Of a stretch of 64,000 nt of DNA, positions 3,547-62,250 are shown piece after piece. The stretch's first letter is position 1. Every line of letters begins with the position of its first letter. The notes under the pieces are model-generated. The model made no database searches. It worked only from the letters and a program-made list of their open reading frames with translations, and was not told where the DNA came from. The position numbers and the translations under genes were made by a program. Location: positions 8,680,001 through 8,744,000 of the forward strand of contig NC_043021.1 in NCBI RefSeq assembly GCF_006345805.1. The letters run 5' to 3'. Source of the DNA: Octopus sinensis (Eukaryota).

Positions 3547-4292
3547 AGGTTGAGAAGAAAGTGCCATTCTTGCTACATTCACCCATCTTTTTTTAAAACT
3601 TCGCTAGACAAAACTTGCCTCTCTACTCTCACTTTCTTTTCAAGTGGTACTTGAAGAAGTTGATGAATAGACCAGAGAGGAAAGTGTTTGTCTCCAATCC
3701 TTTCAGACGCGTCCACCAGATACATTCTTTCGCCATAGCCACAAGGATGATGAAAATAGCTCTTCCTCCCGTTTGAAGGAAGGAGGCGTGACAATATTGA
3801 CGATAGACTAGCTGATAAACCGATCGTCCCACACGTGACAGCAGTTGTTCGACATAAGCCCACAGGTCGGAAATTGTTGGACACTGAACGAGTGCGTGCA
3901 GAACGGTTTCGTCGCTCTGACCGCATCTCGGCAGGTCGGCCCCGTGTTTCTGAGCCGGTCTGTAGAGCTTATCCCGAACGGGTAGCGCTTCTCGGTAGCA
4001 CTGCCAGGCCAGGGATCTCTGGAAGTTGTCCTGGGCCCTGGCCCGAAGTCGTCCCGAACGGCGGGTCAGGTACTCCTCGTCGACGTCCAGGTTCGCCCGA
4101 GCTCGTCGTCGTACCTCCCCTCCACTAAACCCTATAGAATGCTTTGGTTGTGTTGAAGTCACTTAAGGTCGACCCAGGTACGGCAGAGTTGCTTGAGAGC
4201 AACGCGACACTCGCGGTGCCATTCGCCCTTCCTCGGCCTCTTTTTGATCCACGACGGCAGTTCGTCATGAGACGAGCTGCGGGAAAGCGTGC
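3547..4292 (-). mobile_element. Tx1/L1-clade LINE ORF2 3' fragment (frameshifted)
   Basis: FQRSLAWQCYREALPVRDKLYR and zinc knuckle (C)PRCGQSDETVLHALVQC, ending KYHLKRKVRVERQVLSSEV; homologous to 47050-47780 and 47950-49910. Confidence 0.8.
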
Positions 4293-8252: not shown

Positions 8253-8462
8253 TTATATGTGTGCGAGTGTGTTTCGGTGTGAGTGTCTGTATGAGCGTGT
8301 GAGCGTGTGTGTAAGTATGTGTGGCGTGATGAGTGTGTTTATGTATCTATGAGCATGTGTGTATGCCTCCGTATATGCATCTGTACGCTCAGTGTAATGA
8401 GTCTGCATGCGTATGTGTGTGCATGCGTATGTGTATTTGTATATATGTGTGTATGAGTGTGC

Positions 8463-8498
<36 letters not shown>

Positions 8499-8585
8499 GC
8501 ACACACACACACATATATACATACACATATACACACACTCACACAGACATATATATATATATATATACACACCATATATATATAT

Positions 8586-8616
<31 letters not shown>

Positions 8617-8690
8617 CACACACTATATATATATATATACACACACACATATATATATATATACACACACACATATATATATATATATAT

Positions 8691-8747
<57 letters not shown>

Positions 8748-8863
8748 TATATATATATATACACATATATATATATATACACATATATATATATATACAC
8801 ACACTATATATATATATATATATATATGCATACAAATATATATGTGTATTTATATATATGTGC

Positions 8864-8946
<83 letters not shown>

Positions 8947-8985
8947 GTATGTAGGTAGGTATGTATGTATGTATATATATATATC
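8253..8985. repeat. Compound (TG)/(TA)/(CA) microsatellite
   Basis: Direct reading; source of several spurious YI-rich ORFs. Confidence 0.95.
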
Positions 8986-9161
8986 AGTCTGTCTCATAGT
9001 TCTTGTGTGTATATGTTTATTTTCAGCTATCTTAGTTATCTTCATCTTATTTAGCCTTTTCTGATTGATTCAATTCCCACTTTATTTGTTTATAATTACA
9101 ATTCATTTATATATCAGACTTTATATTTATTCAAAATAATTATATTATAGTGATTAAATAA

Positions 9162-9607: not shown

Positions 9608-9669
<62 letters not shown>

Positions 9670-10449
9670 GTCTGTCTGTCTGTTTATCTATCTACCTGTA
9701 TGTCTATGGATCTATCTGTCTGTCTGTCTGTCTATGTATCTAACTATCTATCTGTCAGTCAGTCTGTACATATGCACATGCAAGCACACACATGCACACA
9801 CACGCACTCACAGACACACGCACACATCTTTTACCTTTTATCGTGTACTTGTTTCAGTCAATGGACCGAGGCTATGCTGGAGCACTGCCTTGATGCTGAG
9901 GTACGGCTCCTTGCGTTTGTATCTGTCCCCTACCACTTCCACACAGACGGTATTGTGTTGTTTACATCTCCTTAACTTCGCGGTTCGGTAAAAGAACGAT
10001 CGATCAAATAATTACTGAGCTTGATTTGTTCAACTTAGAGCCTTCAAGGTGGTGCCTCAGCATGGCTGCAGTCCAATGACTGAAGCAAGTAAAAGGTCAA
10101 AGCGTAATTTGCTTAAAATTGATGATTCAATCCATAACAACTCTGTTCCATGACTTGGTGTTCTTATTCATGTTTTTTGTTTGTTTGTTTTTCTGTTGTT
10201 GTTCTTACCTAAGGATCCGGTTATGAAGAGTCTTACGCAAGCAACCTTCTGACAATTATCGTCTTATTTTCGCCTACAGCCATCGCTTGTGACGAGAAGC
10301 GCTGTGCAGTGAGGAAGTGACTGGCAGCTGTTGCCAAAGTGTGTCGAAACTACGTATTCTTAGCGAGACAGCTGATGAGGGGTAATTTACGCTTATTTGT
10401 TGTTTAACCTTGTCTTGTGTGTGTTTTTGCCATTTGTGCATATTACTTT

Positions 10450-10523
<74 letters not shown>

Positions 10524-11309
10524 GTCTGTCTGTCTGTCTGTTTATCTATCTACCTGTATGTCTATGGATCTATCTGTCTGTCTGTCTGTCTATGTATCTA
10601 ACTATCTATCTGTCAGTCAGTCTGTACATATGCACATGCAAGCACACACATGCACACACACGCACTCACAGACACACGCACACATCTTTTACCTTTTATC
10701 GTGTACTTGTTTCAGTCAATGGACCGAGGCTATGCTGGAGCACTGCCTTGATGCTGAGGTACGGCTCCTTGCGTTTGTATCTGTCCCCTACCACTTCCAC
10801 ACAGACGGTATTGTGTTGTTTACATCTCCTTAACTTCGCGGTTCGGTAAAAGAACGATCGATCAAATAATTACTGAGCTTGATTTGTTCAACTTAGAGCC
10901 TTCAAGGTGGTGCCTCAGCATGGCTGCAGTCCAATGACTGAAGCAAGTAAAAGGTCAAAGCGTAATTTGCTTAAAATTGATGATTCAATCCATAACAACT
11001 CTGTTCCATGACTTGGTGTTCTTATTCATGTTTTTTTTTGTTTGTTTTTTTTCTGTTGTTGTTCTTACCTAAGGATCCGGTTATGAAGAGTCTTACGCAA
11101 GCAACCTTCTGACAATTATCGTCTTATTTTCGCCTACAGCCATCGCTTGTGACGAGAAGCGCTGTGCAGTGAGGAAGTGACTGGCAGCTGTTGCCAAAGT
11201 GTGTCGAAACTACGTATTCTTAGCGAGACAGCTGATGAGGGGTAATTTACGCTTATTTGTTGTTTAACCTTGTCTTGTGTGTGTTTTTGCCATTTGTGCA
11301 TATTACTTT

Positions 11310-11371
<62 letters not shown>
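9608..11371. repeat. Near-identical tandem duplication, 860-bp period, two copies, bounded by (CTAT)n
   Basis: GCTTATTTGTTG at 10391 and 11251; copies differ visibly only in repeat and homopolymer lengths; each contains a diverged family T remnant. Confidence 0.92.
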
Positions 11372-19161: not shown

Positions 19162-20456
19162 CTCAAGCACCATAATAAAGAGTATGACAATGCTCCCTAT
19201 ATGTATTCCCTGGGAGATGTGGTGTACCCGTTCATACTCATCTTCGTAGTACTGAGCTTCTTTCCTGTAATCCCGACTGTCATTCTCCTTGCCAACGTAA
19301 TGGCCGAACAGATAAAAACTTTCCTTGATGTTGTTTATATGTAACACAAACAAAGGAGGTTCCGACACATTCCCAGAATGCAGTTTATTTTCTTCTGTTT
19401 GTAATCGCGCTTTCTTAGAATCATCGTATCCACTGATGTGCGGTGAACCCGGTTTGATCCTAGTGTTTTGGGGTAAATCCTTAGTTACTGTTCTGTTGTC
19501 TGCTCCTTTCGCATAGTATCTGGTGTCGCTGTATTTGCGTTCCACTGTTTTCTGTCTTTGTGCTTCTTTCATTGTAATGTCCCGTGGACTTTTCATTGCT
19601 TCCCTAGTAATCATAGAAGGCTTTGTTATGCTAATAATGTTATTATTAATATTATAATTAAAATTATCATCATCATAATTATTATTATCATCACTATCAC
19701 TACTACTAATATCACTACTATTAACACTAGTAATACTACTATTAGTACTACTACTGCTACTATTTTCAATAATAATAGTAGTATTGCTACTGTTAATAGA
19801 AATACCACTGTTACTATCAGTCGTACTACCACTACTACTATTACTAGTACTACTAATCGTAGTAACAATATCACTGATATCATTACTAATAAGACTAATA
19901 CTACTATTGCTTTCGCTACTATCGTTATTAATATTATTATGACTACTACTACTGTTTTTATGACTGTTACTACTTGTATAAATATGACTACTACTACTAC
20001 TACTATTGCTAATGTCTTTACTGTTAGTGTTTGTTTTACTGTGTTTATTTGTGTTTTTGTTATTGTTGTTATTAACTTTGTATTTTTGATGTGTGAGGTT
20101 TTGCTTTTTGCCCGTAGAGGGCGTTGTAGTTCTTGAAACTGCTAGGTTGTTTGCAGTCCCATCATTCTTAAAGGCACTGATAAGCGTCACGTGATCATTT
20201 GAGTTATGTAAATGGCGCCGTTCCGTGTGACGCTGCGTGGTGGCGGTCGTGTCACATGTGCAGTTCCCAGTTGTTGTTGACACTTTTGTGGAATCCTCTG
20301 GATTTGGAAATACTTTATGCAGAGCCATACTTTCTCTGAGCTTTGAAAATACTGATTCAAAACTTTTACCTTTAAAAGATTTGAACTCGTCTGGATATGA
20401 GGTTTTAAGGAAGTCTACAAACTTTGCAAGTTCAGCTTCTTCATTCTCAAATCGAA
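19162..20456 (-). CDS. Internal coding exon of a putative Hv (voltage-gated proton channel)/TMEM266-like voltage-sensor-domain protein: giant S1-S2 loop plus S2 helix
   Basis: Acceptor ttttctttttccag|TT at 20457/20456 and donor GAG|GTAAGA at 19162/19161; 1295 nt = 2+431x3, open throughout. Ends ...ISQGIHIGSIVILFIMVLE, matching the H-x-x-S-I-x-I-L-x5-E register of Hv1 S2 (HYMSITILVFFMME). The frame stays open through a triplet-repeat tract full of stops in other frames. Exon reality is better supported than the family call. Confidence 0.65.
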
Positions 20457-32524: not shown

Positions 32525-33300
32525 CGCAGGAGTGGCTGTGTGGTAAATAGCTGTTTTACCAACCACATGGTTCCGGGTTCAGTCCACTGTGTGGCACCTT
32601 GGGCAAGTGTCTTCTACTATAGCCTCAGGCCGACCAAAGCCTTGTGAGTGGATTTGGTAGACGGAAACTGAACTGAAAGAAGTCCGTCGTATATATATAT
32701 ATATATATGTATGTGTGTGGTGTGTGTTGTGTGTGGTGTGTGTGTGTGTGTGTGTGTGTGTGTTGTGTGTCTGTGTTTTTGACCCCCCTAGCATTGCTTG
32801 ACTACCGATGCTGGTGTGTTTACGTCATCCGTCACCTAGCGGTTCGGCAAAAGAGACCGATAGAATAAGTACTGGGCTTACAAAGAATAAGTCCCGGGGT
32901 CGATTTGATCGACTAAAAGGCGGTGCTCCAGCATGGCCGCAGTCAAATGACTGAAACAAATAAAAGAGTAAAGAGTGTGTGCCTGGTAAGGCTGTGTGCC
33001 TTTACGTATGTTCGTCTGTACCTGTGTTTATCTCTGAGCGTAAACTTTGAATTTGTGCAAGTCCTTAGGATTTGAATAGCGAGCTGTCAGTGAACGATTA
33101 TGCGCGCCTGTGAATAGATCAGGAATATATATAAGAAAACAAAAGGGTATGTGTCTATGACTATGGCTGTATATACACGTTTAGGAGTGCATGTGCGTAT
33201 AAGAATGCATAATTATGTGCGTATTGCGAGTTATACGTCATGATTTTATGTGGTTACATATACGAACAAGAGTACATATATACACAAACACTACACATAC
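30110..33300 (+). repeat. Tandem array of four ~0.8-kb units, each a family T SINE plus a ~370-bp spacer
   Basis: SINE starts at 30110, 30877, 31680 and 32523; shared spacer GTGTGTGCCTGGTAAGGCTGTGTGCC...CACAAACACTACAC. Confidence 0.92.
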
Positions 33301-33424
33301 AATATATATATATGTATATATATGTGTGTGTGTGTCTGTGTGTGTTGGATCTCATCTTTACTCCCTCGCTATATCTCAGACAGTATTCGGCCTAAAATTT
33401 GTTGCAAACGTCGAGCAGTTTTGT

Positions 33425-33427
33425 CTG

Positions 33428-33513
<86 letters not shown>

Positions 33514-33560
33514 CTACTATCTATCTATCTATCTATCTCGCTCTCTTTCTCTCTCCTTGT
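33425..33560. repeat. (CT)n/(CTAT)n microsatellite
   Basis: Direct reading. Confidence 0.9.
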
Positions 33561-33809
33561 TTCACTGTCTCTCTGTGCATGTGTAAATGTATCTGATCGT
33601 GTGTGTGTATGTGTGTATCTATGTATGTATGCATGTACGTACGTGTAAGTGCGTGTGCGCGCACACGCGTGAATGTGTGTGCGCTCGTGTGAGTGCGTGT
33701 GTGTGGAGCTGGCTGCGTACGCGACATCACTTTTGAATCGACGTGTCGTTCTTAAAACCGTGCCATTGTGAATATAACTGCAAGTACAGATGCGCGTAGG
33801 TGTGCGTGC

Positions 33810-33855
<46 letters not shown>

Positions 33856-34178
33856 GCACACACACACATGTATATGTGTGTATGTATGTATTTACATTTA
33901 CATTTATTACCGGTTTCATAAGCGACATGTGATGTCACGTGTGCAGTGAGAAGGTGGATAAATAATGATGGCGCGAGCACCATAGATTGGGTGTTGGTGA
34001 CGTAATAATCAATGTTCATTTAGAATGTGAAGCTGTTTGCTACATTAGCTTAGCTTTCTGTACAGATCACATTACTGGTGAGGCTTACCTACACGCACGC
34101 ACACACAGACACACACACACATTCATATACACGTGTGTGCGTGTGTGTTTATATATATATATATATTTTCTTATTATA

Positions 34179-34230
<52 letters not shown>

Positions 34231-34367
34231 TGTAATTTTATATGTATCTATATATTAGAAAGCTTCACTGTGGCTGTAATAAGGTGTTTACATTTTTTAT
34301 TGCAGCCACAGGAGGGCTTTCTCGTATTTACTTTTAAATTAAAATCAATTTTTTCATATTTATGCTG

Positions 34368-34381
34368 TATCTATCTATCTG

Positions 34382-34469
<88 letters not shown>

Positions 34470-34530
34470 CCTCTCTCTCTCTCTCTCCTCTCTATCTATC
34501 TATCTATCTATCTACCTACCTATCTCTATA
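34368..34530. repeat. (CTAT)n microsatellite
   Basis: Direct reading. Confidence 0.9.
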
Positions 34531-34653
34531 GATATGTATATCAGTATACATATATTCATACACATACAAAATATATGTGTAGTATAGATACATACATACA
34601 TCCGTGCATACACACACGTATACGCAGACCGAGAGAGACAGAAAGAGAGATAG

Positions 34654-34690
<37 letters not shown>

Positions 34691-35120
34691 TAAAGAGAGA
34701 GAGAAACAGGGAGAGTGAGAGGGGAGGAAGAAAAATAAAGAGAGTAAGAGAGATGTAAAGTAATTTTGGTTTCTGTATGTATTCTTGGATGCGAGAGAAT
34801 TGGTGTAAACGGTTCTGTAGCAGAAGTAGGTTTTTATGTAGAAATCTACAGTAATTTCAATTTTGCGTGTAGATACACTAGAATGGTTTGTATACGTAGT
34901 CTATAGGTTTATGTCTTCTCTCGTTCTCTCTTTGACTTTCTGTTATTCTGTTATTCTGTTATTCTGTTATTCTCTCTGTATTACTCTTTTCTATTACAGA
35001 CGCATAAATTCTCTATTTCTCCGTTGTCTTCTCCCTCAATATATCGCTTTTTGTTTTTCTACACAAATGGACACACACTGCTTCTATGTACACTCGTAGA
35101 CACACATAAATGACAATATA

Positions 35121-35172
<52 letters not shown>

Positions 35173-35224
35173 TACATGCATTCGTTTGCAAATCCATATA
35201 TAGTGTGCACCCAAGCTCACTCAG

Positions 35225-35330
35225 ATAATAGATAGATAGTTAGACAGATGGATCGATAGATAAATAGATAGATAAATAGAGAGATAGACAGACAGACAGA
35301 TAGACAGACGGATGGATGGATGGATGGACG

Positions 35331-35424
<94 letters not shown>

Positions 35425-35446
35425 CAGATAGATAGTTGGATGGACG

Positions 35447-35497
<51 letters not shown>

Positions 35498-35634
35498 GGA
35501 TGGATGGATAGATAGACAGATAGATAGATAGATGGATGGATGGATGGATGGATGGATATATAGATAGATAGATAGATAGATAGATGGATGGATGGATGGA
35601 TAGATAGACAGACAGATAGATGGATGGATGGATG

Positions 35635-35665
<31 letters not shown>

Positions 35666-35814
35666 GGATGGATGGATGGATGGATGGATGGATGGATAGA
35701 TGGATAGATAGATGGATAGATAGATAGATAGATGGATGGATAGATGGATAGATAGACAGATAGATAGATGGATGGATAGATAGACAGACAGACAGATAGA
35801 TCGATCGATCGATC

Positions 35815-35868
<54 letters not shown>

Positions 35869-35880
35869 CAGACAGACATA
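35225..35880. repeat. (GATA)n/(GGAT)n mosaic microsatellite
   Basis: Direct reading; source of the IYLS ORFs. Confidence 0.95.
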
Positions 35881-36202
35881 TGCTCTGCTGCAAATGTTAG
35901 CAACCAGAGAAGCACAAATTAAGCGCGAGCATAATATGCATCCGTCTATTTTATAGTTGGATTATTGTGGAATCTCTCCCTTGAACACCGGACTGGATCC
36001 TAACAGAAACAAATAAAACTGACCTAAAACTCAATGAAATGAAATTTGCATAAACGTGTCTATCGACGTGACCAGAAGTGATCTGGACAAATGATACCCG
36101 GCATTTTGAGATACAGTTCAATAAATAAGGGCATGGGTTTCCCCCCCCAAAAAAGGAAAAATAAAACAAGGTCGTGGGATAATTGGAATGACAATTCTTT
36201 TC

Positions 36203-36390
36203 CTCTTTTACTTGTTTCTTGTCAATTATTTGATTGCAGCCATGCTGGAGCAACGCCTTTAGGTCGAGCAAATCGATCCCCTGAGATTTATTTCTTTGTA
36301 AGCCTAGTACTTACTTCTATCGATCTCTTTAACCGAGCGGGGAAGGTAAACCACCAGCATCGGTTGTCAAGCGATGTTGGGACAAACACC
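36203..36390 (-). mobile_element. SINE family T, 3' module
   Basis: Diverged reverse complement. Confidence 0.7.
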
Positions 36391-36419
36391 GCCACACACA
36401 CACACACCACACATATTTT

Positions 36420-36574
36420 AAATATATATACTAAATATATATAATATATAATTATATATATATATATATATATACATATATATACACATATATACATATA
36501 TATATATATACTTAAATATACATAATTTATATACATAATATACATATATATATATAACATATATATATATATAC

Positions 36575-36608
<34 letters not shown>

Positions 36609-36653
36609 CATTATATATATATATATAATAAATAAGTATATCTATATAATATA

Positions 36654-36701
<48 letters not shown>

Positions 36702-37032
36702 GTATATATATATGTATATAGTATATATGTATATATATATGTATATATGTATATATATATTTTATATAATATATGTATATATGTTATATATATACGTATA
36801 TATGTATATATATATGTTATATATATATATAGTATATGTATATATGTATATATGTATATATGTATGTATATATATTGTAATATATTATGTATATATATGT
36901 ATATATGTATAATATATATATATATGTATATATATATATGTATATATGTATATGTATATATGTATTATATATATATGTATGTACATATATGTATATGTGT
37001 GTGTGCGTGTGTATGTGTATGTGTGTGTATAC
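36420..37032. repeat. Degenerate (TA)n/(TATG)n tract
   Basis: Direct reading. Confidence 0.92.
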
Positions 37033-37127
37033 ACTTACATCATGAGGATATGCTGGTGTAATTGGGATGGCTCTTTTTGTATTGTTTTTTTCTGTTGTTC
37101 TTTAATCTCGTCCCGATATGGAAGAAC

Positions 37128-37245
37128 GCAGCAGCAGCAATAGCAGCAGCAGCAGCAGCAACCACAGCAGCAGCAGCAGCAGCAGCAGCACCACACAGCA
37201 GCAGCAGCAGCAGCAGCAACCACAGCAGCAGCACAGCAGCAGCAG
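37128..37245. repeat. (GCA)n triplet repeat
   Basis: Direct reading. Confidence 0.9.
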
Positions 37246-37544
37246 AAAGACGGCTTGAATGGTTTATAATGGATGTTGTCAATTTAGATTATCAAACGTT
37301 TATATTATAATTAGCCAGAGATAGATAAGGAAGAAGAAGACGTGGGGAGGGGTGGGAGCGAGGTAGGTGGATAGCTGGGAGGGTAGGCTGTTAGGGTGGG
37401 TGGGTGGGTGGGTAGGTAGGTAATTAAGTAGGTGGGTGGGTGGACGGGTAGTTAGGGTGGCAAATGAGCAGATAAAAATAGGAATAGTTCGATCGAAGAA
37501 GGTTTGCTGGTGGATCGATGGGTGTATAAATAGATGTGCGCGTG

Positions 37545-37633
37545 TGACTGTATATACATACATGAATACATACATACGTACATACATATATATCTATATA
37601 TATACACACACAATCACACATGCGCATATATAT

Positions 37634-37670
<37 letters not shown>

Positions 37671-37700
37671 ATATACATACATACATATATATATATATTC

Positions 37701-37732
<32 letters not shown>

Positions 37733-38010
37733 TATACACACATACATACACTCACATGTATATATATATGCGTGTATCTATACAAAGGCACATAAACGCG
37801 CGTGTACACAAACACACACACACACATATATATACATACATACATGCATACAATATATACACACTCACATATAAGCGTATATATATGTATGTATATATAT
37901 ATATATATAATATATATATACACACATACACTCACATGTGTATATATGCGTGTATCTATATAAAGGCACATCAACGCGCGTGTACACAGACACATATATA
38001 GGTGCATGTA

Positions 38011-38051
<41 letters not shown>

Positions 38052-38065
38052 ACATCTATGCACAC
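37545..38065. repeat. TA/CA microsatellite with an internal ~80-bp duplicated unit
   Basis: CACTCACATG...AAAGGCACAT..ACGCGCGTGTACAC occurs twice (~37745 and ~37925). Confidence 0.85.
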
Positions 38066-45163: not shown

Positions 45164-45385
45164 TTTCTTCATCATACCTCTGCAATCCATTCGCTGATCC
45201 AATTCCATTGTATCTCTGAAGTGCAGTGGAATGGACACGTTATCCTTTAATAAAAATAATGCAGTATTCCAGAACTTACTAATAATTCAAGCTATGAAGT
45301 TTCTGTTCTATGAAGGTTCTGTTTTTTTTAATAGATTACCAATCTTGAACATGTCTTTCTTGAAGAACACACACTTTGTGACGTG

Positions 45386-45387
45386 AT

Positions 45388-45422
<35 letters not shown>

Positions 45423-45775
45423 AAGAAAAAAAGAAAGAAAGAAAGAAGGAAGGAAAGAAGGAATGAATGAAGGAAGGAAGAAAGGAAGGAATGAAGGAAG
45501 GAAGAAAGACAGAAAGGAAGAAAGAAAGGAAGGAAGGGAGAAAGGAAGAAAGGAAGGGAGGAAGAAAGGAAGAAAGAAAGAAAGAAAAGAAGAAAGAAAG
45601 AAAGGAAGAAAGGAAGGAAGAAAGAAGGAAGAAAGAGAAAGAAAGAAAGAAAGAAAGGAAGGAAAAAAGAAAAGAAGACAGGAAGAAAGAAAGGAAGGAA
45701 GAAAGAAAGGAAGAAAGAAAGGAGGGAAGAAAGAAAGAAAGGAAGGAAAGAAGGAAAGAAAGGAAGAAAAAGATG
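45386..45775 (+). repeat. ~390-bp polypurine (GAAA/GGAA)n tract
   Basis: Direct reading. Confidence 0.95.
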
Positions 45776-46316
45776 TTTTAATAAATCGTAGATACATAAG
45801 TAATAGATTTTAAAAAAAACAAAAAAAAACAAAAAAAAAACAAAAAAACCCCAAAACGATAGAAGACACGTTAATCTACTTACAACGTATTGCCTGTAAA
45901 TCGACCATCAATTCGGCCAGGACACAAATACATTCCACAACAACTAAAGCGCAGACCAGGATCAAAACAGGCCGACTGTGAAGAGACTTTAGCGTTTTCG
46001 ATCTGCAACTGTAAAAATAAAAATAAAAATAAAAATAAAAATAAAAATAAAAAAGAAACGGTGAACAACAACAAAGGACTATTTGTGAGTTATCACTGGG
46101 CTGGGTATTTTTTTAATAGAATTGGCTTGAGTCGGTTTTGATTGTCGTAAAAAAAACCCAATGTAACTGATACGATCAGATTTATTTATTTTTTTTAAAT
46201 ATTATTATTATTATTATTATTAAATATTACAATCGATATTACGAGTTAATTTTTTTTTTGTTTTTTTCATCTTTTATGAAAAATATTTCATTCATTTAAT
46301 TATGTAGAGAGGATTT

Positions 46317-50422: not shown

Positions 50423-51131
50423 TCTTTTATGCCGTATCTTATATCAACGCTGGTATTGTTTAACCCTAGTTAATGCCTGATCGGACAGACCTCTGACGAA
50501 AGCATTCTATTTGTCATTGTCCTCCCTTTTTTCCAATATACAATCCAACGAATGCAGGATCACATAATGCAACATACCGTACTTTTCAGACAAGAGGACG
50601 AGGTTTGAGGAAGACAGAATTGCTATTTCTGTTTGACCGAATGACAAAAATAGATTCCCCTGATTTGCTCGTTCTAATAATGTTATTAATCTTGGTATGG
50701 TTTTAGATTTTATATTTACTTTGATAAAACCAACAGATTTCTGCGAGAGAAAAAAAATGCAGTCCAGAGCAAGCAATTAGAAAAAACTCAATTTTCAACA
50801 GCGGGAAGTTGACAAAGAGAAGAAATAGTTTTCTCCTTTATATTTCATGTCTTAATGTTGGTGAAGAAAATGGGCGCCATCTTAACTAGGTTGTGATATA
50901 TGTGTCGCAGCCACGCAAACATCACTCGTTTATAATAAATACCGAATTGAAAAGGCGGCGATTTTGCTGGGAAGCGAAGTTCTCCATCGACAACGCCACT
51001 ACACCTATCAAATTCCTACTAACTTAATGAAAACCATTTTACTCGAGTACTTTTAAATAGCTTAAAAGCTAAATTGTCTCAGTATATATGCATATGTGTG
51101 TGTATTCATATACATATGTATGTATAGCTAA

Positions 51132-61110: not shown

Positions 61111-61575
61111 ACAGCACACGCCATCAAAGTGGCACTAGGGTTGCAAATATGGGAAGCCCAATGTACTCTTTATCACTGTACGTCTGCTAAGGGTATACCA
61201 GGCACATGCAACACAACCATACGTGTGCGACACGGTGACCTCATATCAGGATATACAGCACATGGCCATTACAGGTGGGGCCCAGGTAGAATTTTTCCTC
61301 AAGGAGCCCATCCTGCTGAAAAGGGCTCTGAATAGGGTTTGTATATGGATGATGAATGAAGCACACGTTTCCAGGGGTGGGGTGGAGTGGAATTATTCAA
61401 ATCCCCATGAAATCTGCTCAACACATGGCTATGATATTCCCCCCCCCACTACTCCTGTTCGTGATCAGAGATGCACATACCGTCAGCCACTAAGGGACAT
61501 GCTCAACTGATTAAGGTCAAATAACTAACAACACAAATCTGTGGTATTGAGTAGAATATTTGCTGTAGCCTATCT
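61111..61575 (+). repeat. Unclassified interspersed repeat, copy 2 (3'-truncated)
   Basis: Shares GCCATCAAAGTG..., CAGGTGGGGCCCAG and GATCAGAGATGCACATA.CGTCAGCCACTAAGGGACATGCTCAAC with copy 1. Confidence 0.7.
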
Positions 61576-61700
61576 ACTACTACTACTGCTGCTGGTACTA
61601 CTGTTTCTGCTGCTGCTGCTGCTACTACTACTACTACTACTACTCCTACTACTACTACTGCTGCTGCTGCTCTTGCTACTGCTGGTACTACTACTGCTGG

Positions 61701-61736
<36 letters not shown>

Positions 61737-62250
61737 ACAGTTCCGTAGTTATCGTTGTCTTGCTACTAGACTCCTCGATGTTGTTGCTCTTGTTGCTGCT
61801 GCTGTTGTTTGTTGTCGCTGCCGTTGCTACTACTGCTACTGTTGATCATTCTGTTGTTGTTGTTGTTGCTGCTGACGCCGCCAGTGCAACAGCAGCAGCA
61901 GCAGCAACAGCAGCAGTTGTTGTTGTTGTTATTATCACCGCTGCCGTTGACGATAGTAAACTGCCTTTTTGCTGTAAGCTTTCTTCTCTTGTTGTTAGTT
62001 AGTTAGTTAGTTACTATTACTACTACTACTGCTCTCTGGCAACTAATAGTCAGCTGCTATTATATCTACGCCGTTCGTGCCGTTGTTATTGTTGTTAGTA
62101 CTATTATCACCGACGTTACACATCCACCAATCAGCTGCCATTGTTACAGCTACTGTTGATAGTACTACTGCTATTACAGCTGCTAGTCAGCTGCTCTTTC
62201 TGTGCTGATGTGGTAGCAGCAGCAGCAGCAGTAGTAGTTGTTATTATTTC
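61572..62250. repeat. Mosaic CTA/CTG/GTT/GCA triplet-repeat tract
   Basis: Direct reading. Confidence 0.85.

What the first reader, a model, noticed from the sequence alone, without database searches (positions are those of the whole stretch)
19162..20456. Hv-like voltage-sensor protein with a ~410-aa mucin-like extracellular S1-S2 loop
Seen: a spliceable 431-codon exon with a helical-looking start (RFENEEAELAKFVDFLKTSYPDEF), a ~150-aa Ser/Asn/Thr tract (19620-20080), roughly 15 N-x-S/T sequons, and a terminal helix in exact register with Hv1 S2. Established: in human Hv1 the S1-S2 loop is extracellular and only about a dozen residues; molluscs have several Hv paralogues, some with enlarged loops (from memory, verify). 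Inference: a cephalopod Hv-family paralogue whose outer loop became a large glycosylated domain through triplet-repeat expansion, possibly a tether or chemical/mechanical sensor.
Basis: partly seen in the sequence, partly recalled or inferred. Interest (0 to 1): 0.75.

Follow-up and report, generated by a model that had tools for sequence, protein, structure and literature searches.

The report
Mollusc proton-channel gene with giant outer loop

Summary
Window 20456..19162 (minus strand) is an open exon of 1295 nt (431 codons) with good splice sites. It starts with a predicted helical segment, contains a Ser/Asn/Thr triplet-repeat tract, and ends in register with Hv1 S2. A matching S1 exon lies 25 kb upstream (46008..45884) in a compatible phase.

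An exhaustive HMMER search found 21 relatives in gastropods, bivalves and a nemertean. The full-length ones have S1, an S1-S2 loop of 139-601 aa, S2, S3 and an S4 reading LLLPWRVVR. That S4 is the mark of the published "unconventional" HV3 proton-channel family (Aplysia AcHV3; Chaves et al. 2023). An Aplysia orthologue is printed in that review's supplement.

The large loop is therefore ancestral to the family. Triplet repeats explain only about 150 of the 422 residues here. The 15 N-glycosylation sequons are what the composition predicts. The two ends of the loop are conserved and predicted to be structured; the middle is disordered and hypervariable.

The S2b-S4 exons are not in the window, so completeness and proton conduction are inferred from orthologues. 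Verdict: a new member of a known kind, of modest interest.

The parts
50546..50740 (-). Upstream exon candidate, starting at cag|AAATCTGTT. It matches residues 1-65 of the near-identical gene model P0001. Its coding status and 3' splice donor are unresolved.
   Evidence: tblastn gives 81.5% identity to P0001 residues 1-65. None of the GT donors examined by eye (TACG|GTATGT, TAT|GTGATC, GATT|GTATAT) puts it in the phase that the S1 exon needs (my reading).
45884..46008 (-). S1 exon, 125 nt: acag|T TGC AGA ... CGT T|gtaagt. It encodes CRSKTLKSLHSRPVLILVCALVVVECICVLAELMVDLQAIR plus the first base of a Phe codon.
   Evidence: Sequence. It is the top tblastn hit of human Hv1 in the window. P0001 and the Haliotis, Physella and Aplysia orthologues all carry the same segment starting at CR.(K/Q)TLK.
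45897..45971 (-). Transmembrane helix S1 (PVLILVCALVVVECICVLAELMVDL).
   Evidence: Hydropathy peak. It aligns to Hv1 S1 in 3wkv and 5oqk, which are the only two PDB hits.
45933..45935 (-). GAA codon giving Glu at the position of the Hv1 selectivity-filter Asp112.
   Evidence: Gap-free register with human VVLDALLVLAELILDL. Glu at this site is a known proton-selective natural variant, EtHV1 (PMC10377628).
20457..45883 (-). Intron of about 25.4 kb between the S1 exon and the loop exon. It is rich in microsatellites.
   Evidence: Phase match: T|TT gives Phe. The junction peptide ..LQAIRF|RFENEE.. is found in P0001 and in RefSeq models of Haliotis, Physella and Aplysia.
19162..20456 (-). The exon of the finding: the S1-S2 loop plus the outer two-thirds of S2.
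   Evidence: for the sequence. Homologues. The same acceptor (tttcag|TTCGG..) and donor (GAG|gtatgt) are seen in an independent genomic contig, L001.
20326..20454 (-). Conserved N-terminal loop module, RFENEEAELAKFVDFLKTSYPDEFKSFKGKSFESVFSKLRESM. It is predicted helical and, in the Haliotis model, is a direct outward continuation of S1.
   Evidence: Alignment A1 consensus RFENEE.E..KFVD.LK..YP..F..F.G.T.E. AlphaFold2 pLDDT is 78-86. In the Haliotis orthologue a single helix runs over residues 53-102.
19620..20080 (-). Ser/Asn/Thr/Ile/Asp low-complexity tract made of degenerate AGT/AAT triplet repeats. It is predicted disordered and differs in length between the window and P0001.
   Evidence: TRF arrays. 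In-frame indels of 1-3 aa relative to P0001. pLDDT below 50. No counterpart in other species.
19599..19694 (-). In-frame 96-nt segment with GT...AG ends (GTGATG...GGGAAG) that is missing from P0001. It is a candidate internal intron ('exitron') or a gene-prediction artefact.
   Evidence: Of the offsets tested, it is the only 96-nt removal that reproduces P0001's ..SSSDTMKSPRD...
19207..19353 (-). Conserved C-terminal loop module: a beta-hairpin (LFVLHINNIKESFYLFGH), then a helix that runs straight into S2. It includes a nearly invariant His (exon residue 411).
   Evidence: A1 consensus FVL.INN.KESF.LV..Y....Y..EY.RIH..S..IH. AlphaFold2 predicts strands 368-374 and 379-385 and a helix 396-430. 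The same elements appear at pLDDT 68-90 in Haliotis.
19162..19206 (-). Outer part of transmembrane helix S2 (IHIGSIVILFIMVLE). The His at 19203..19201 corresponds to Hv1 H140, and the Glu at 19164..19162 to Hv1 E153.
   Evidence: The intron directly after this Glu codon is seen (as E|V read-through) in eight independent single-exon ORFs.

Best explanation
[quoted passage not shown] More exactly, it belongs to the subfamily typified by Aplysia LOC101852977 (XM_013090418), Haliotis LOC124141029 and Physella LOC131938628.

Shown here:
- One exon encodes S1, with Glu at the selectivity-filter position.
- After a 25-kb intron, the exon of the finding encodes a 422-aa S1-S2 loop and the outer part of S2, with the His and Glu of Hv1 in register.
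- The loop has three parts. A conserved helical N-module prolongs S1 outward. A conserved C-module (a beta-hairpin plus a helix) prolongs S2 outward. Between them lies a disordered, hypervariable spacer.
- In this lineage the spacer was lengthened by AGT/AAT triplet slippage.

Inferred from orthologues:
- The missing exons, further downstream and outside the window, encode the rest of S2, S3 and an S4 reading LLLPWRVVR (first gating Arg lost, Pro before the Trp), followed by a long cytoplasmic tail.
- Such a protein would be a proton-selective pathway with weak voltage dependence and a leak component, as measured for AcHV3.
- The loop faces the outside or an organelle lumen. Its spacer would act as a probably glycosylated, length-tolerant linker rather than as a new sensor domain.
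For: The near-identical gene model P0001 joins S1 to this exon exactly as predicted.

An exhaustive phmmer search found 21 relatives at E = 8e-41 to 7e-4. Those that carry a name (10 of the 20 looked up; the rest are unnamed contig ORFs) come from molluscs, plus one nemertean. The full-length ones carry S1-S4 with LLPWR(V/I)(V/I)R.

blastp places the window closest to Haliotis (51% identity, 7e-36), then Physella and Aplysia XM_013090418, and less close to AcHV3 (36%) and human Hv1 (35% over S1).

Against the PDB, the Haliotis orthologue hits human Hv1 at 3e-10, mouse Hv1 at 4e-8 and Ci-VSP at 3e-4. The window's own S1 hits only the two Hv1 entries.

Both intron positions are conserved at the DNA level in another genome, and in eight single-exon ORFs.

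Loop lengths across the family are 139-601 aa.

The literature describes the HV3 family, its very large and variable S1-S2 loops, the xPWRxxR motif and AcHV3 currents (PMC10377628 and PMC10911540). Glu at the filter position keeps proton selectivity.

AlphaFold2 predicts structured ends and a disordered centre.
Against: - S2b, S3, S4 and the C-terminus are not in the window, so a complete sensor in this genome is unproven.
- P0001 also stops at the end of this exon.
- No start codon or first coding exon could be fixed.
- No transcript data were available, and P0001 looks like a genome-based model rather than a cDNA.
- No member of this Glu-type subfamily has been recorded electrophysiologically. 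The only functional data are for the paralogue AcHV3.
- The S2 Phe of the charge-transfer centre (hHv1 F150) is Met here.
- Pfam Ion_trans does not reach threshold on the window protein or on the closest orthologues.
Confidence: 0.85

Rival explanations
1. The protein is a voltage-sensor-only or otherwise non-conducting Hv derivative, working like TMEM266/HVRP1 or like the 'structures evolved from HV channels' mentioned in the review. The conserved extracellular modules would serve a non-channel role such as adhesion, ligand binding or partner recruitment.
For: In the orthologues the first S4 Arg is lost and a Pro is inserted. The S2 charge-transfer Phe is replaced by Met. The extracellular N- and C-modules are at least as conserved as the helices. 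The review itself warns that some mollusc Hv duplicates may no longer be channels. No recording exists for this subfamily.
Against: The stated minimal requirements for proton selectivity are present: a carboxylate in mid-S1 plus an Arg counter-charge in the orthologues' S4, and the S4 Trp (text). AcHV3, which has the same xPWRxxR S4 and a 299-aa loop, conducts protons.
Confidence: 0.2
2. One reading: a cephalopod-specific innovation in which a short Hv loop grew into a large glycosylated domain by triplet-repeat expansion and acquired a tether or chemo/mechanosensor role.
For: The triplet tract is real and varies in length between the window and P0001. It raises the sequon count to 15, against 4-8 in orthologues. 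No equivalent tract is seen in other species.
Against: Loops of 139-601 aa with the same end modules and intron positions exist in gastropods, bivalves and a nemertean. About 270 of the 422 residues are not repeat-derived. The sequons match the compositional expectation. The tract is predicted disordered.
Confidence: 0.1
3. The locus is a truncated or decaying gene copy (S1 plus loop only), or the long ORF is partly intronic and is not translated as one piece.
For: No S2b-S4 exons lie within 19 kb downstream. The P0001 model ends at the same exon. No start codon was found. A 96-nt GT-AG segment inside the exon is skipped in P0001.
Against: The upstream intron is already 25 kb, so a downstream intron longer than 19 kb is unremarkable. 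The 431-codon frame is intact in a 37% G+C sequence. The unique parts differ from P0001 by only 3 of about 290 residues, and all indels are in-frame. The skipped segment is a multiple of 3, so both forms stay in frame.
Confidence: 0.07

Closest known systems
Aplysia californica LOC101852977 (XM_013090418), Haliotis rufescens LOC124141029 (XP_046364842) and Physella acuta LOC131938628 (XP_059152717). These are uncharacterised HV3-type paralogues; the Aplysia sequence is printed in the supplement of PMC10377628.
   Same: - S1 reads VV(V/I)EC.CVL.ELMVDLQGI(R/K), with Glu at the filter position.
- The junction peptide is F|RFENEE.
- The N-module (FV..L+..YP..F) and C-module (FVLEINNVKESFFLVAEY...EY.KIH) are shared.
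- S2 has the form (I/L)H..S(L/I).IL(S/F).MV.E (Ser in the orthologues, Phe in the window).
- Both intron positions match.
   Different: The central spacer is unrelated in sequence and differs in length: 199 aa loop in Haliotis, 585 in Physella, 601 in Aplysia, 422 here. Only this lineage has the Ser/Asn triplet tract, followed by a roughly 110-aa charged segment (residues 287-398). S2b-S4 cannot be compared because they lie outside the window.
AcHV3 (Aplysia, XM_005094218), the only functionally characterised 'unconventional' HV3 channel (PMC10911540).
   Same: A very large S1-S2 loop (299 aa) described as lacking obvious organisation. The xPWRxxR-type S4 is shared with the window's orthologues. 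The YP-containing N-module is recognisable. Identity over S1 plus the N-module is 36%.
   Different: AcHV3 has Asp, not Glu, in S1. It lacks the RFENEE and FVLEINN motifs. It is a paralogue, not the orthologue.
Human and mouse Hv1 (HVCN1; PDB 5oqk, 3wkv).
   Same: S1 and S2 align without gaps. The acidic filter residue, E119/D123-type acidic residues, the H140-type His and the E153-type Glu are all conserved. Hv1 is the best solved-structure match.
   Different: The loop is 15 aa in Hv1 and 422 aa here. Asp is replaced by Glu, and F150 by Met. In the orthologues the S4 reads LPWRVVR instead of RLWRVAR.
Ci-VSP and TMEM266/HVRP1 (non-conducting voltage-sensor proteins).
   Same: The four-helix voltage-sensor fold. 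Ci-VSP is the next-best PDB hit of the Haliotis orthologue (3e-4).
   Different: No phosphatase or other Pfam domain was found in the orthologues. The S1 carboxylate and S4 Trp, which the review says are absent from Ci-VSP, are present here. TMEM266 was not compared directly.

Membership tests
Voltage-gated proton channel (Hv) family | An acidic residue (Asp or Glu) in mid-S1 at the Asp112 position. | tested here: met
   Glu codon at 45935..45933, in gap-free register with hHv1. Glu is accepted as a filter residue.
Voltage-gated proton channel (Hv) family | Four-helix sensor S1-S4 with no pore domain. | tested here: inconclusive
   S1 and the outer part of S2 are in the window. No S2b, S3 or S4 was found in the window by regex or by tblastn with orthologue segments. 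The orthologues have all four helices.
Voltage-gated proton channel (Hv) family | S4 signature RxWRxxR. | tested here: inconclusive
   Not encoded in the window. The orthologues have LPWRVVR, so the Trp and two Arg are kept and the first Arg is lost.
Voltage-gated proton channel (Hv) family | Closer in sequence to Hv1 than to other voltage-sensor proteins. | tested here: met
   The only PDB hits of the window protein are Hv1 (E about 0.6-0.9, weak). The Haliotis orthologue hits Hv1 at 3e-10 against Ci-VSP at 3e-4 and Nav at 0.08.
Voltage-gated proton channel (Hv) family | Proton-selective, voltage- and pH-dependent conductance. | not testable with these tools
   This needs patch clamp. The only available data are for the paralogue AcHV3.
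Mollusc 'unconventional' HV3-type subfamily (Chaves et al. 2023) | [quoted passage not shown] | tested here: met
   422 aa by the same rule that gives 298 for AcHV3 (published value 299) and 15 for hHv1.
Mollusc 'unconventional' HV3-type subfamily (Chaves et al. 2023) | S4 motif xPWRxxR. | tested here: inconclusive
   Outside the window. Present in every full-length relative recovered (P0002, P0003, P0005, P0018, P0020-22).
Mollusc 'unconventional' HV3-type subfamily (Chaves et al. 2023) | Large intracellular C-terminal domain. | tested here: inconclusive
   Not in the window. The orthologues have about 200-350 aa after S4.
Mollusc 'unconventional' HV3-type subfamily (Chaves et al. 2023) | Orthology to catalogued members. 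| tested here: met
   The best matches are Haliotis, Physella and Aplysia XM_013090418. The end modules and both intron positions are shared.
Mucin-like (PTS) domain | A Pro/Thr/Ser-rich repetitive tract. | tested here: not met
   Over exon residues 141-290 the counts are Ser 52/150 (35%) and Thr 14/150 (9%), but also Asn 18%, Ile 13% and Asp 8%. Pro is only 3% of the whole loop. The spacers of the Physella and Aplysia orthologues are closer to PTS composition (Pro 9%).
Mucin-like (PTS) domain | Dense O- or N-glycosylation. | not testable with these tools
   15 sequons are present but not enriched over composition (13.0 +/- 2.9).
Voltage-sensing phosphatase (Ci-VSP type) | A cytoplasmic phosphatase domain after S4. 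| tested here: not met
   No phosphatase domain passed Pfam's cut-off on six full-length relatives; the only phosphatase-related entry was a sub-threshold PTPlike_phytase match on P0020 (E 0.1, 13 bits against a 27-bit cut-off). This part of the protein is not in the window itself.

The most novel reading that the evidence does not exclude
The S1-S2 'loop' of this subfamily is not just an unstructured insert. Its two ends form a conserved extracellular turret found from molluscs to a nemertean. S1 and S2 each continue about 20-25 residues beyond the membrane, joined by a helix hairpin, a Cys-x-Cys motif, a beta-hairpin and a nearly invariant extra His two helical turns above the Zn2+/pH-sensing His. 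This turret could gate or tune proton access in response to pH, metal or a ligand. The middle would be a freely evolving, slippage-prone and possibly glycosylated spacer. The published description of the AcHV3 loop is 'lacks obvious organization'.
Probability: 0.3. Interest if true: 0.5.

Novelty: new member of a known kind. Interest (0 to 1): 0.28.

Why it matters
The finding adds one probable cephalopod member to the recently recognised, expanded Hv family of molluscs. Only one giant-loop member of that family, AcHV3, has been recorded.

The useful extra is anatomical. Comparing 16-19 relatives shows that the giant loop consists of two conserved, probably structured end modules around a hypervariable spacer, and that the exon borders are fixed. 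This gives clean boundaries for deletion and chimera constructs to ask what these loops do to proton-channel gating.

It does not overturn anything known about Hv channels.

Tried and rejected
- Search for S4 or S3 in the window: regex for RxxRxxR and (P)WRxxR in all frames, and tblastn with the S2b-S4, N-terminal and C-terminal segments of the orthologues at very permissive settings. Nothing was found.
- Pfam on the window protein and P0001: no family.
- The search for homologous proteins: one search returned only P0001; one search failed on a parameter limit; (short S1+S2 query) found no candidate; (Haliotis S2b-S4, aimed at finding a cephalopod C-terminal half) returned four gastropod or unnamed fragments. 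No second cephalopod sequence was obtained, so loop length across cephalopods could not be compared.
- The look-up of encoding contigs and a metagenome-contig scan for P0001's DNA: nothing. P0001 could therefore not be compared at the nucleotide level, and dN/dS was not computed.
- First coding exon and start codon: the P0001-matching exon at 50740 cannot be spliced in frame to the S1 exon through any of the GT donors examined by eye. P0001's residues 62-70 correspond to the reverse complement of the preceding codons, which suggests an artefact in that model. Left unresolved.
- Foldseek of the Haliotis model against the PDB: no significant match (best E = 0.17). The top hits are all voltage-sensor channels, but the model's disordered regions spoil the comparison.
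- I considered using the 81% identity of the upstream exon as a neutral yardstick to claim strong purifying selection on the loop. I rejected this as unsafe, because that part of P0001 may be mis-modelled.
- Species assignment: only a UniParc number (UPI00071E2900) is attached to P0001. 'Octopus' remains a guess.
Full report
1. What is in the sequence

The feature is on the minus strand. Reading the reverse complement, a polypyrimidine tract and cag precede TTCGATTTGAGAATGAAGAA at 20456. The frame then stays open to TTGGAG|gtaagag at 19162. The exon is 1295 nt: two bases that finish a codon, then 431 codons, ending in phase 0. It lies inside a 472-codon ORF, much the longest in the window. All other ORFs of 130 aa or more are translations of microsatellites or small fragments.

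- The tract at about 19620-20080 consists of degenerate triplet arrays, AGT (Ser) and AAT (Asn) on the coding strand.
- There are exactly 15 N-x-S/T sequons. Shuffling the same residues gives 13.0 +/- 2.9, so the sequons are a by-product of composition.
- The last 14 residues, HIGSIVILFIMVLE, align without gaps to human Hv1 H140-E153.

2. The rest of the gene in the window

Read in context, this is a 125-nt exon at 46008..45884. It encodes CRSKTLKSLHSRPVLILVCALVVVECICVLAELMVDLQAIR and ends one base into a codon. That T plus the TT at 20456 makes Phe, so the two exons join in frame across a 25.4-kb intron.

This is Hv1 S1 in gap-free register, with Glu in place of the selectivity-filter Asp112. 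The E119/D123-type acidic residues are kept. In a phmmer search of the PDB, the only two hits were the mouse and human Hv1 structures. Both were weak (E about 0.6-0.9) and both lay on S1.

Hydropathy shows only two membrane-grade segments, S1 and the exon's last 15-20 residues. The roughly 420 residues between them are therefore a loop. The basic flank before S1 and the acidic flanks on the loop side fit the usual Hv topology, with the loop outside or lumenal. That topology is an inference.

No S4-like or S3-like coding segment exists anywhere in the window. The upstream intron is already 25 kb, so a downstream intron of more than 19 kb is not surprising. Completeness of the gene nevertheless cannot be shown from this window.

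3. Relatives

The word-indexed protein search found one near-identical protein, P0001 (508 aa, UniParc UPI00071E2900, no species name). It contains ...LMVDLQAIRFRFENEE..., which is exactly the predicted junction, and it ends at ...FIMVLE, exactly the exon end.

P0001 differs from the window by 3 substitutions in about 290 unique residues, by in-frame 1-3-aa indels inside the repeat tract, and by a 32-aa gap. Among the offsets tested, that gap corresponds to a single 96-nt removal, 19694..19599, which begins GT and ends AG. P0001 is therefore probably a genome-based gene model that spliced out a small in-frame intron, not an independent cDNA.

An exhaustive phmmer search of 1.84 billion representatives with P0001 gave 21 further relatives, at E = 8e-41 to 7e-4. 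The named ones are Haliotis (several species and isoforms), Physella, Batillaria, Elysia, Plakobranchus, Mytilus, Mactra ('Voltage-gated hydrogen channel 1'), Potamilus and the nemertean Tubulanus.

The full-length proteins show the whole architecture:
- a short N-terminus, then S1;
- a loop that begins RFENEE...;
- S2, of the form (I/L)H..SL.ILS.MV.E T.IKLFC;
- S3, FEVFDAFIV..SFALDF;
- S4, LVLLLPWRVVRIVNSF;
- a long tail.

The Haliotis protein hits human Hv1 at 3e-10, mouse Hv1 at 4e-8 and Ci-VSP at 3e-4 in the PDB.

Eight hits are single-exon ORFs that read ..V|RFENEE at the start and ..MV.E|V.. at the end. In one of them, contig L001, the DNA shows tttcag|TTCGG at the start and GAG|gtatgt at the end. 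Both intron positions of the window's exon are thus conserved in other genomes. The Haliotis isoforms differ in first exon and C-terminus but never in the loop, and all start the S1 exon at CRQQTLK, the same border as 46008.

4. Comparison with what is known

Chaves et al. (PMC10911540; review PMC10377628) describe exactly this kind of protein. [quoted passage not shown] They count four putative Hv genes in Octopus bimaculoides.

AcHV3 has a 299-aa loop that 'lacks obvious organization'. It gives proton-selective leak currents with very weak voltage dependence.

The review's supplement prints seven Aplysia sequences. One of them, XM_013090418, reads ...VVVECACVLAELMVDLQGIKFRFENELEE... It has a roughly 600-aa loop with a poly-Ser run, then ...FVLEINNVIDSFLLVAEF..., S2-S3, and an S4 printed as LLLPRVVRIVNSF, presumably with a lost W.

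By blastp the window is closest to Haliotis, Physella and this Aplysia gene, and more distant from AcHV3 itself.

Measured by one rule, loop lengths are: window 422, P0001 387, Haliotis 199, Physella 585, the Aplysia orthologue 601, AcHV3 298, Mytilus 139, Potamilus 179, AcHV1 15 and human 15.

A Glu filter residue is a known natural variant that keeps proton selectivity (EtHV1).

5. Anatomy of the loop

The multiple alignment (A1) shows two conserved modules:
- N-module: RFENEE.E..KFVD.LK..YP..F..F.G.T.E.....L, followed by a C.C motif.
- C-module: FVL.INN.KESF.LV..Y .... Y..EY.RIH..S..IH.AS..ILS.MVLE.

Nothing between the two modules can be aligned.

AlphaFold2 on the window exon (16-row alignment; overall mean pLDDT 47.6) predicts N-module helices at pLDDT 78-86 and a disordered centre. 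It also predicts a beta-hairpin (residues 368-374 and 379-385) and a helix over 396-430 that runs into S2.

On the complete Haliotis orthologue (mean pLDDT 60.7; 80-90 in the sensor), S1 continues as one helix for about 24 residues beyond the membrane. The hairpin and an outward extension of S2 are predicted at pLDDT 68-90.

These are predictions from shallow alignments. Whether the modules pack together was not testable here.

In the window lineage the spacer contains the Ser/Asn/Thr/Ile/Asp triplet tract and a charged segment of about 110 aa (residues 287-398) that has no counterpart elsewhere. Pro is nearly absent, so the tract is not a classical PTS mucin domain. The Physella and Aplysia spacers are closer to one.

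6. Most likely mechanism

Shown: an Hv-family S1 with a carboxylate filter residue; the S2 His and Glu in register; a loop of about 420 aa with conserved ends.

Inferred from orthologues: an S3 and an S4 with Trp and two Arg, lacking the first gating charge.

Inferred from AcHV3: a proton-selective pathway with shallow voltage dependence and a leak component. Its site of action, plasma membrane or an acidic organelle, is open; the review notes intracellular retention motifs in several mollusc Hv proteins.

The spacer most likely acts as a length-tolerant, possibly glycosylated linker. The conserved turret-like ends are the better candidates for any regulatory role.

Replacement of the S2 charge-transfer Phe by Met, together with the S4 changes, leaves a real possibility that this subfamily is not a conventional voltage-gated channel.

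7. Verdict

The evolutionary inference (loop created by triplet expansion in cephalopods) and the novelty claim are not supported. This is a new, probably cephalopod, member of a published family. Interest is modest, and lies mainly in the conserved-module view of the loop.

Noticed in passing
window 19599-19694 (minus strand): An in-frame 96-nt segment with GT...AG ends inside the exon is exactly what the near-identical model P0001 lacks (32 aa). It could be a real small 'exitron' or a gene-predictor artefact.
   Followed up: partly
window 50540-50580 (minus strand) and P0001 residues 55-70: P0001's residues 62-70 (LQRMQDHII) match the plus-strand translation of the very codons that encode its preceding residues (GMLHSVIL). 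That gene model therefore contains a foldback (inverted duplication) just before the S1 exon. In the window, this upstream exon cannot be spliced in frame to S1. The true start codon of the gene remains unknown.
   Followed up: partly
window 19171-19173 (Met428 of the exon translation); also P0002 and other relatives: The S2 phenylalanine of the gating charge-transfer centre (human Hv1 F150) is Met in the window and in the Haliotis orthologue P0002 (..SIMVIE), the only relative aligned residue by residue to Hv1.
   Followed up: no
window 19222-19224 (His411 of the exon translation): A second His, seven residues (two helical turns) outside the Zn2+/pH-sensing His of S2, is nearly invariant (90% or more of sequences) across the 16 aligned sequences.
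   Followed up: no
P0021 (Tubulanus polymorphus XP_074660947): A nemertean relative has S4 LVILLPWRVIRIVN, with the Pro before the Trp. The 2023 review states that this Pro is missing from nemertean large-loop Hv channels.
   Followed up: no
window 9625-11332: An 858-860-bp unit is repeated in tandem at 98-100% identity (300-nt blocks compared). Each unit carries a (TCTA/TCTG)-type microsatellite. It lies in the presumed intron downstream of the exon.
   Followed up: partly
window 3629-4162 (minus strand): An ORF fragment matches the zinc-binding domain of reverse transcriptases (zf-RVT, E = 2e-5, just below the Pfam cut-off). It is a probable non-LTR retrotransposon remnant.
   Followed up: partly
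window 8253-9064, 33250-38055, 45308-45832, 61541-62002: Long microsatellite blocks give spurious ORFs of 130-240 aa in several frames. One block (CTTT/CCTT-type, 45308-45832) starts about 50 bp after the S1 exon's donor site.
   Followed up: no
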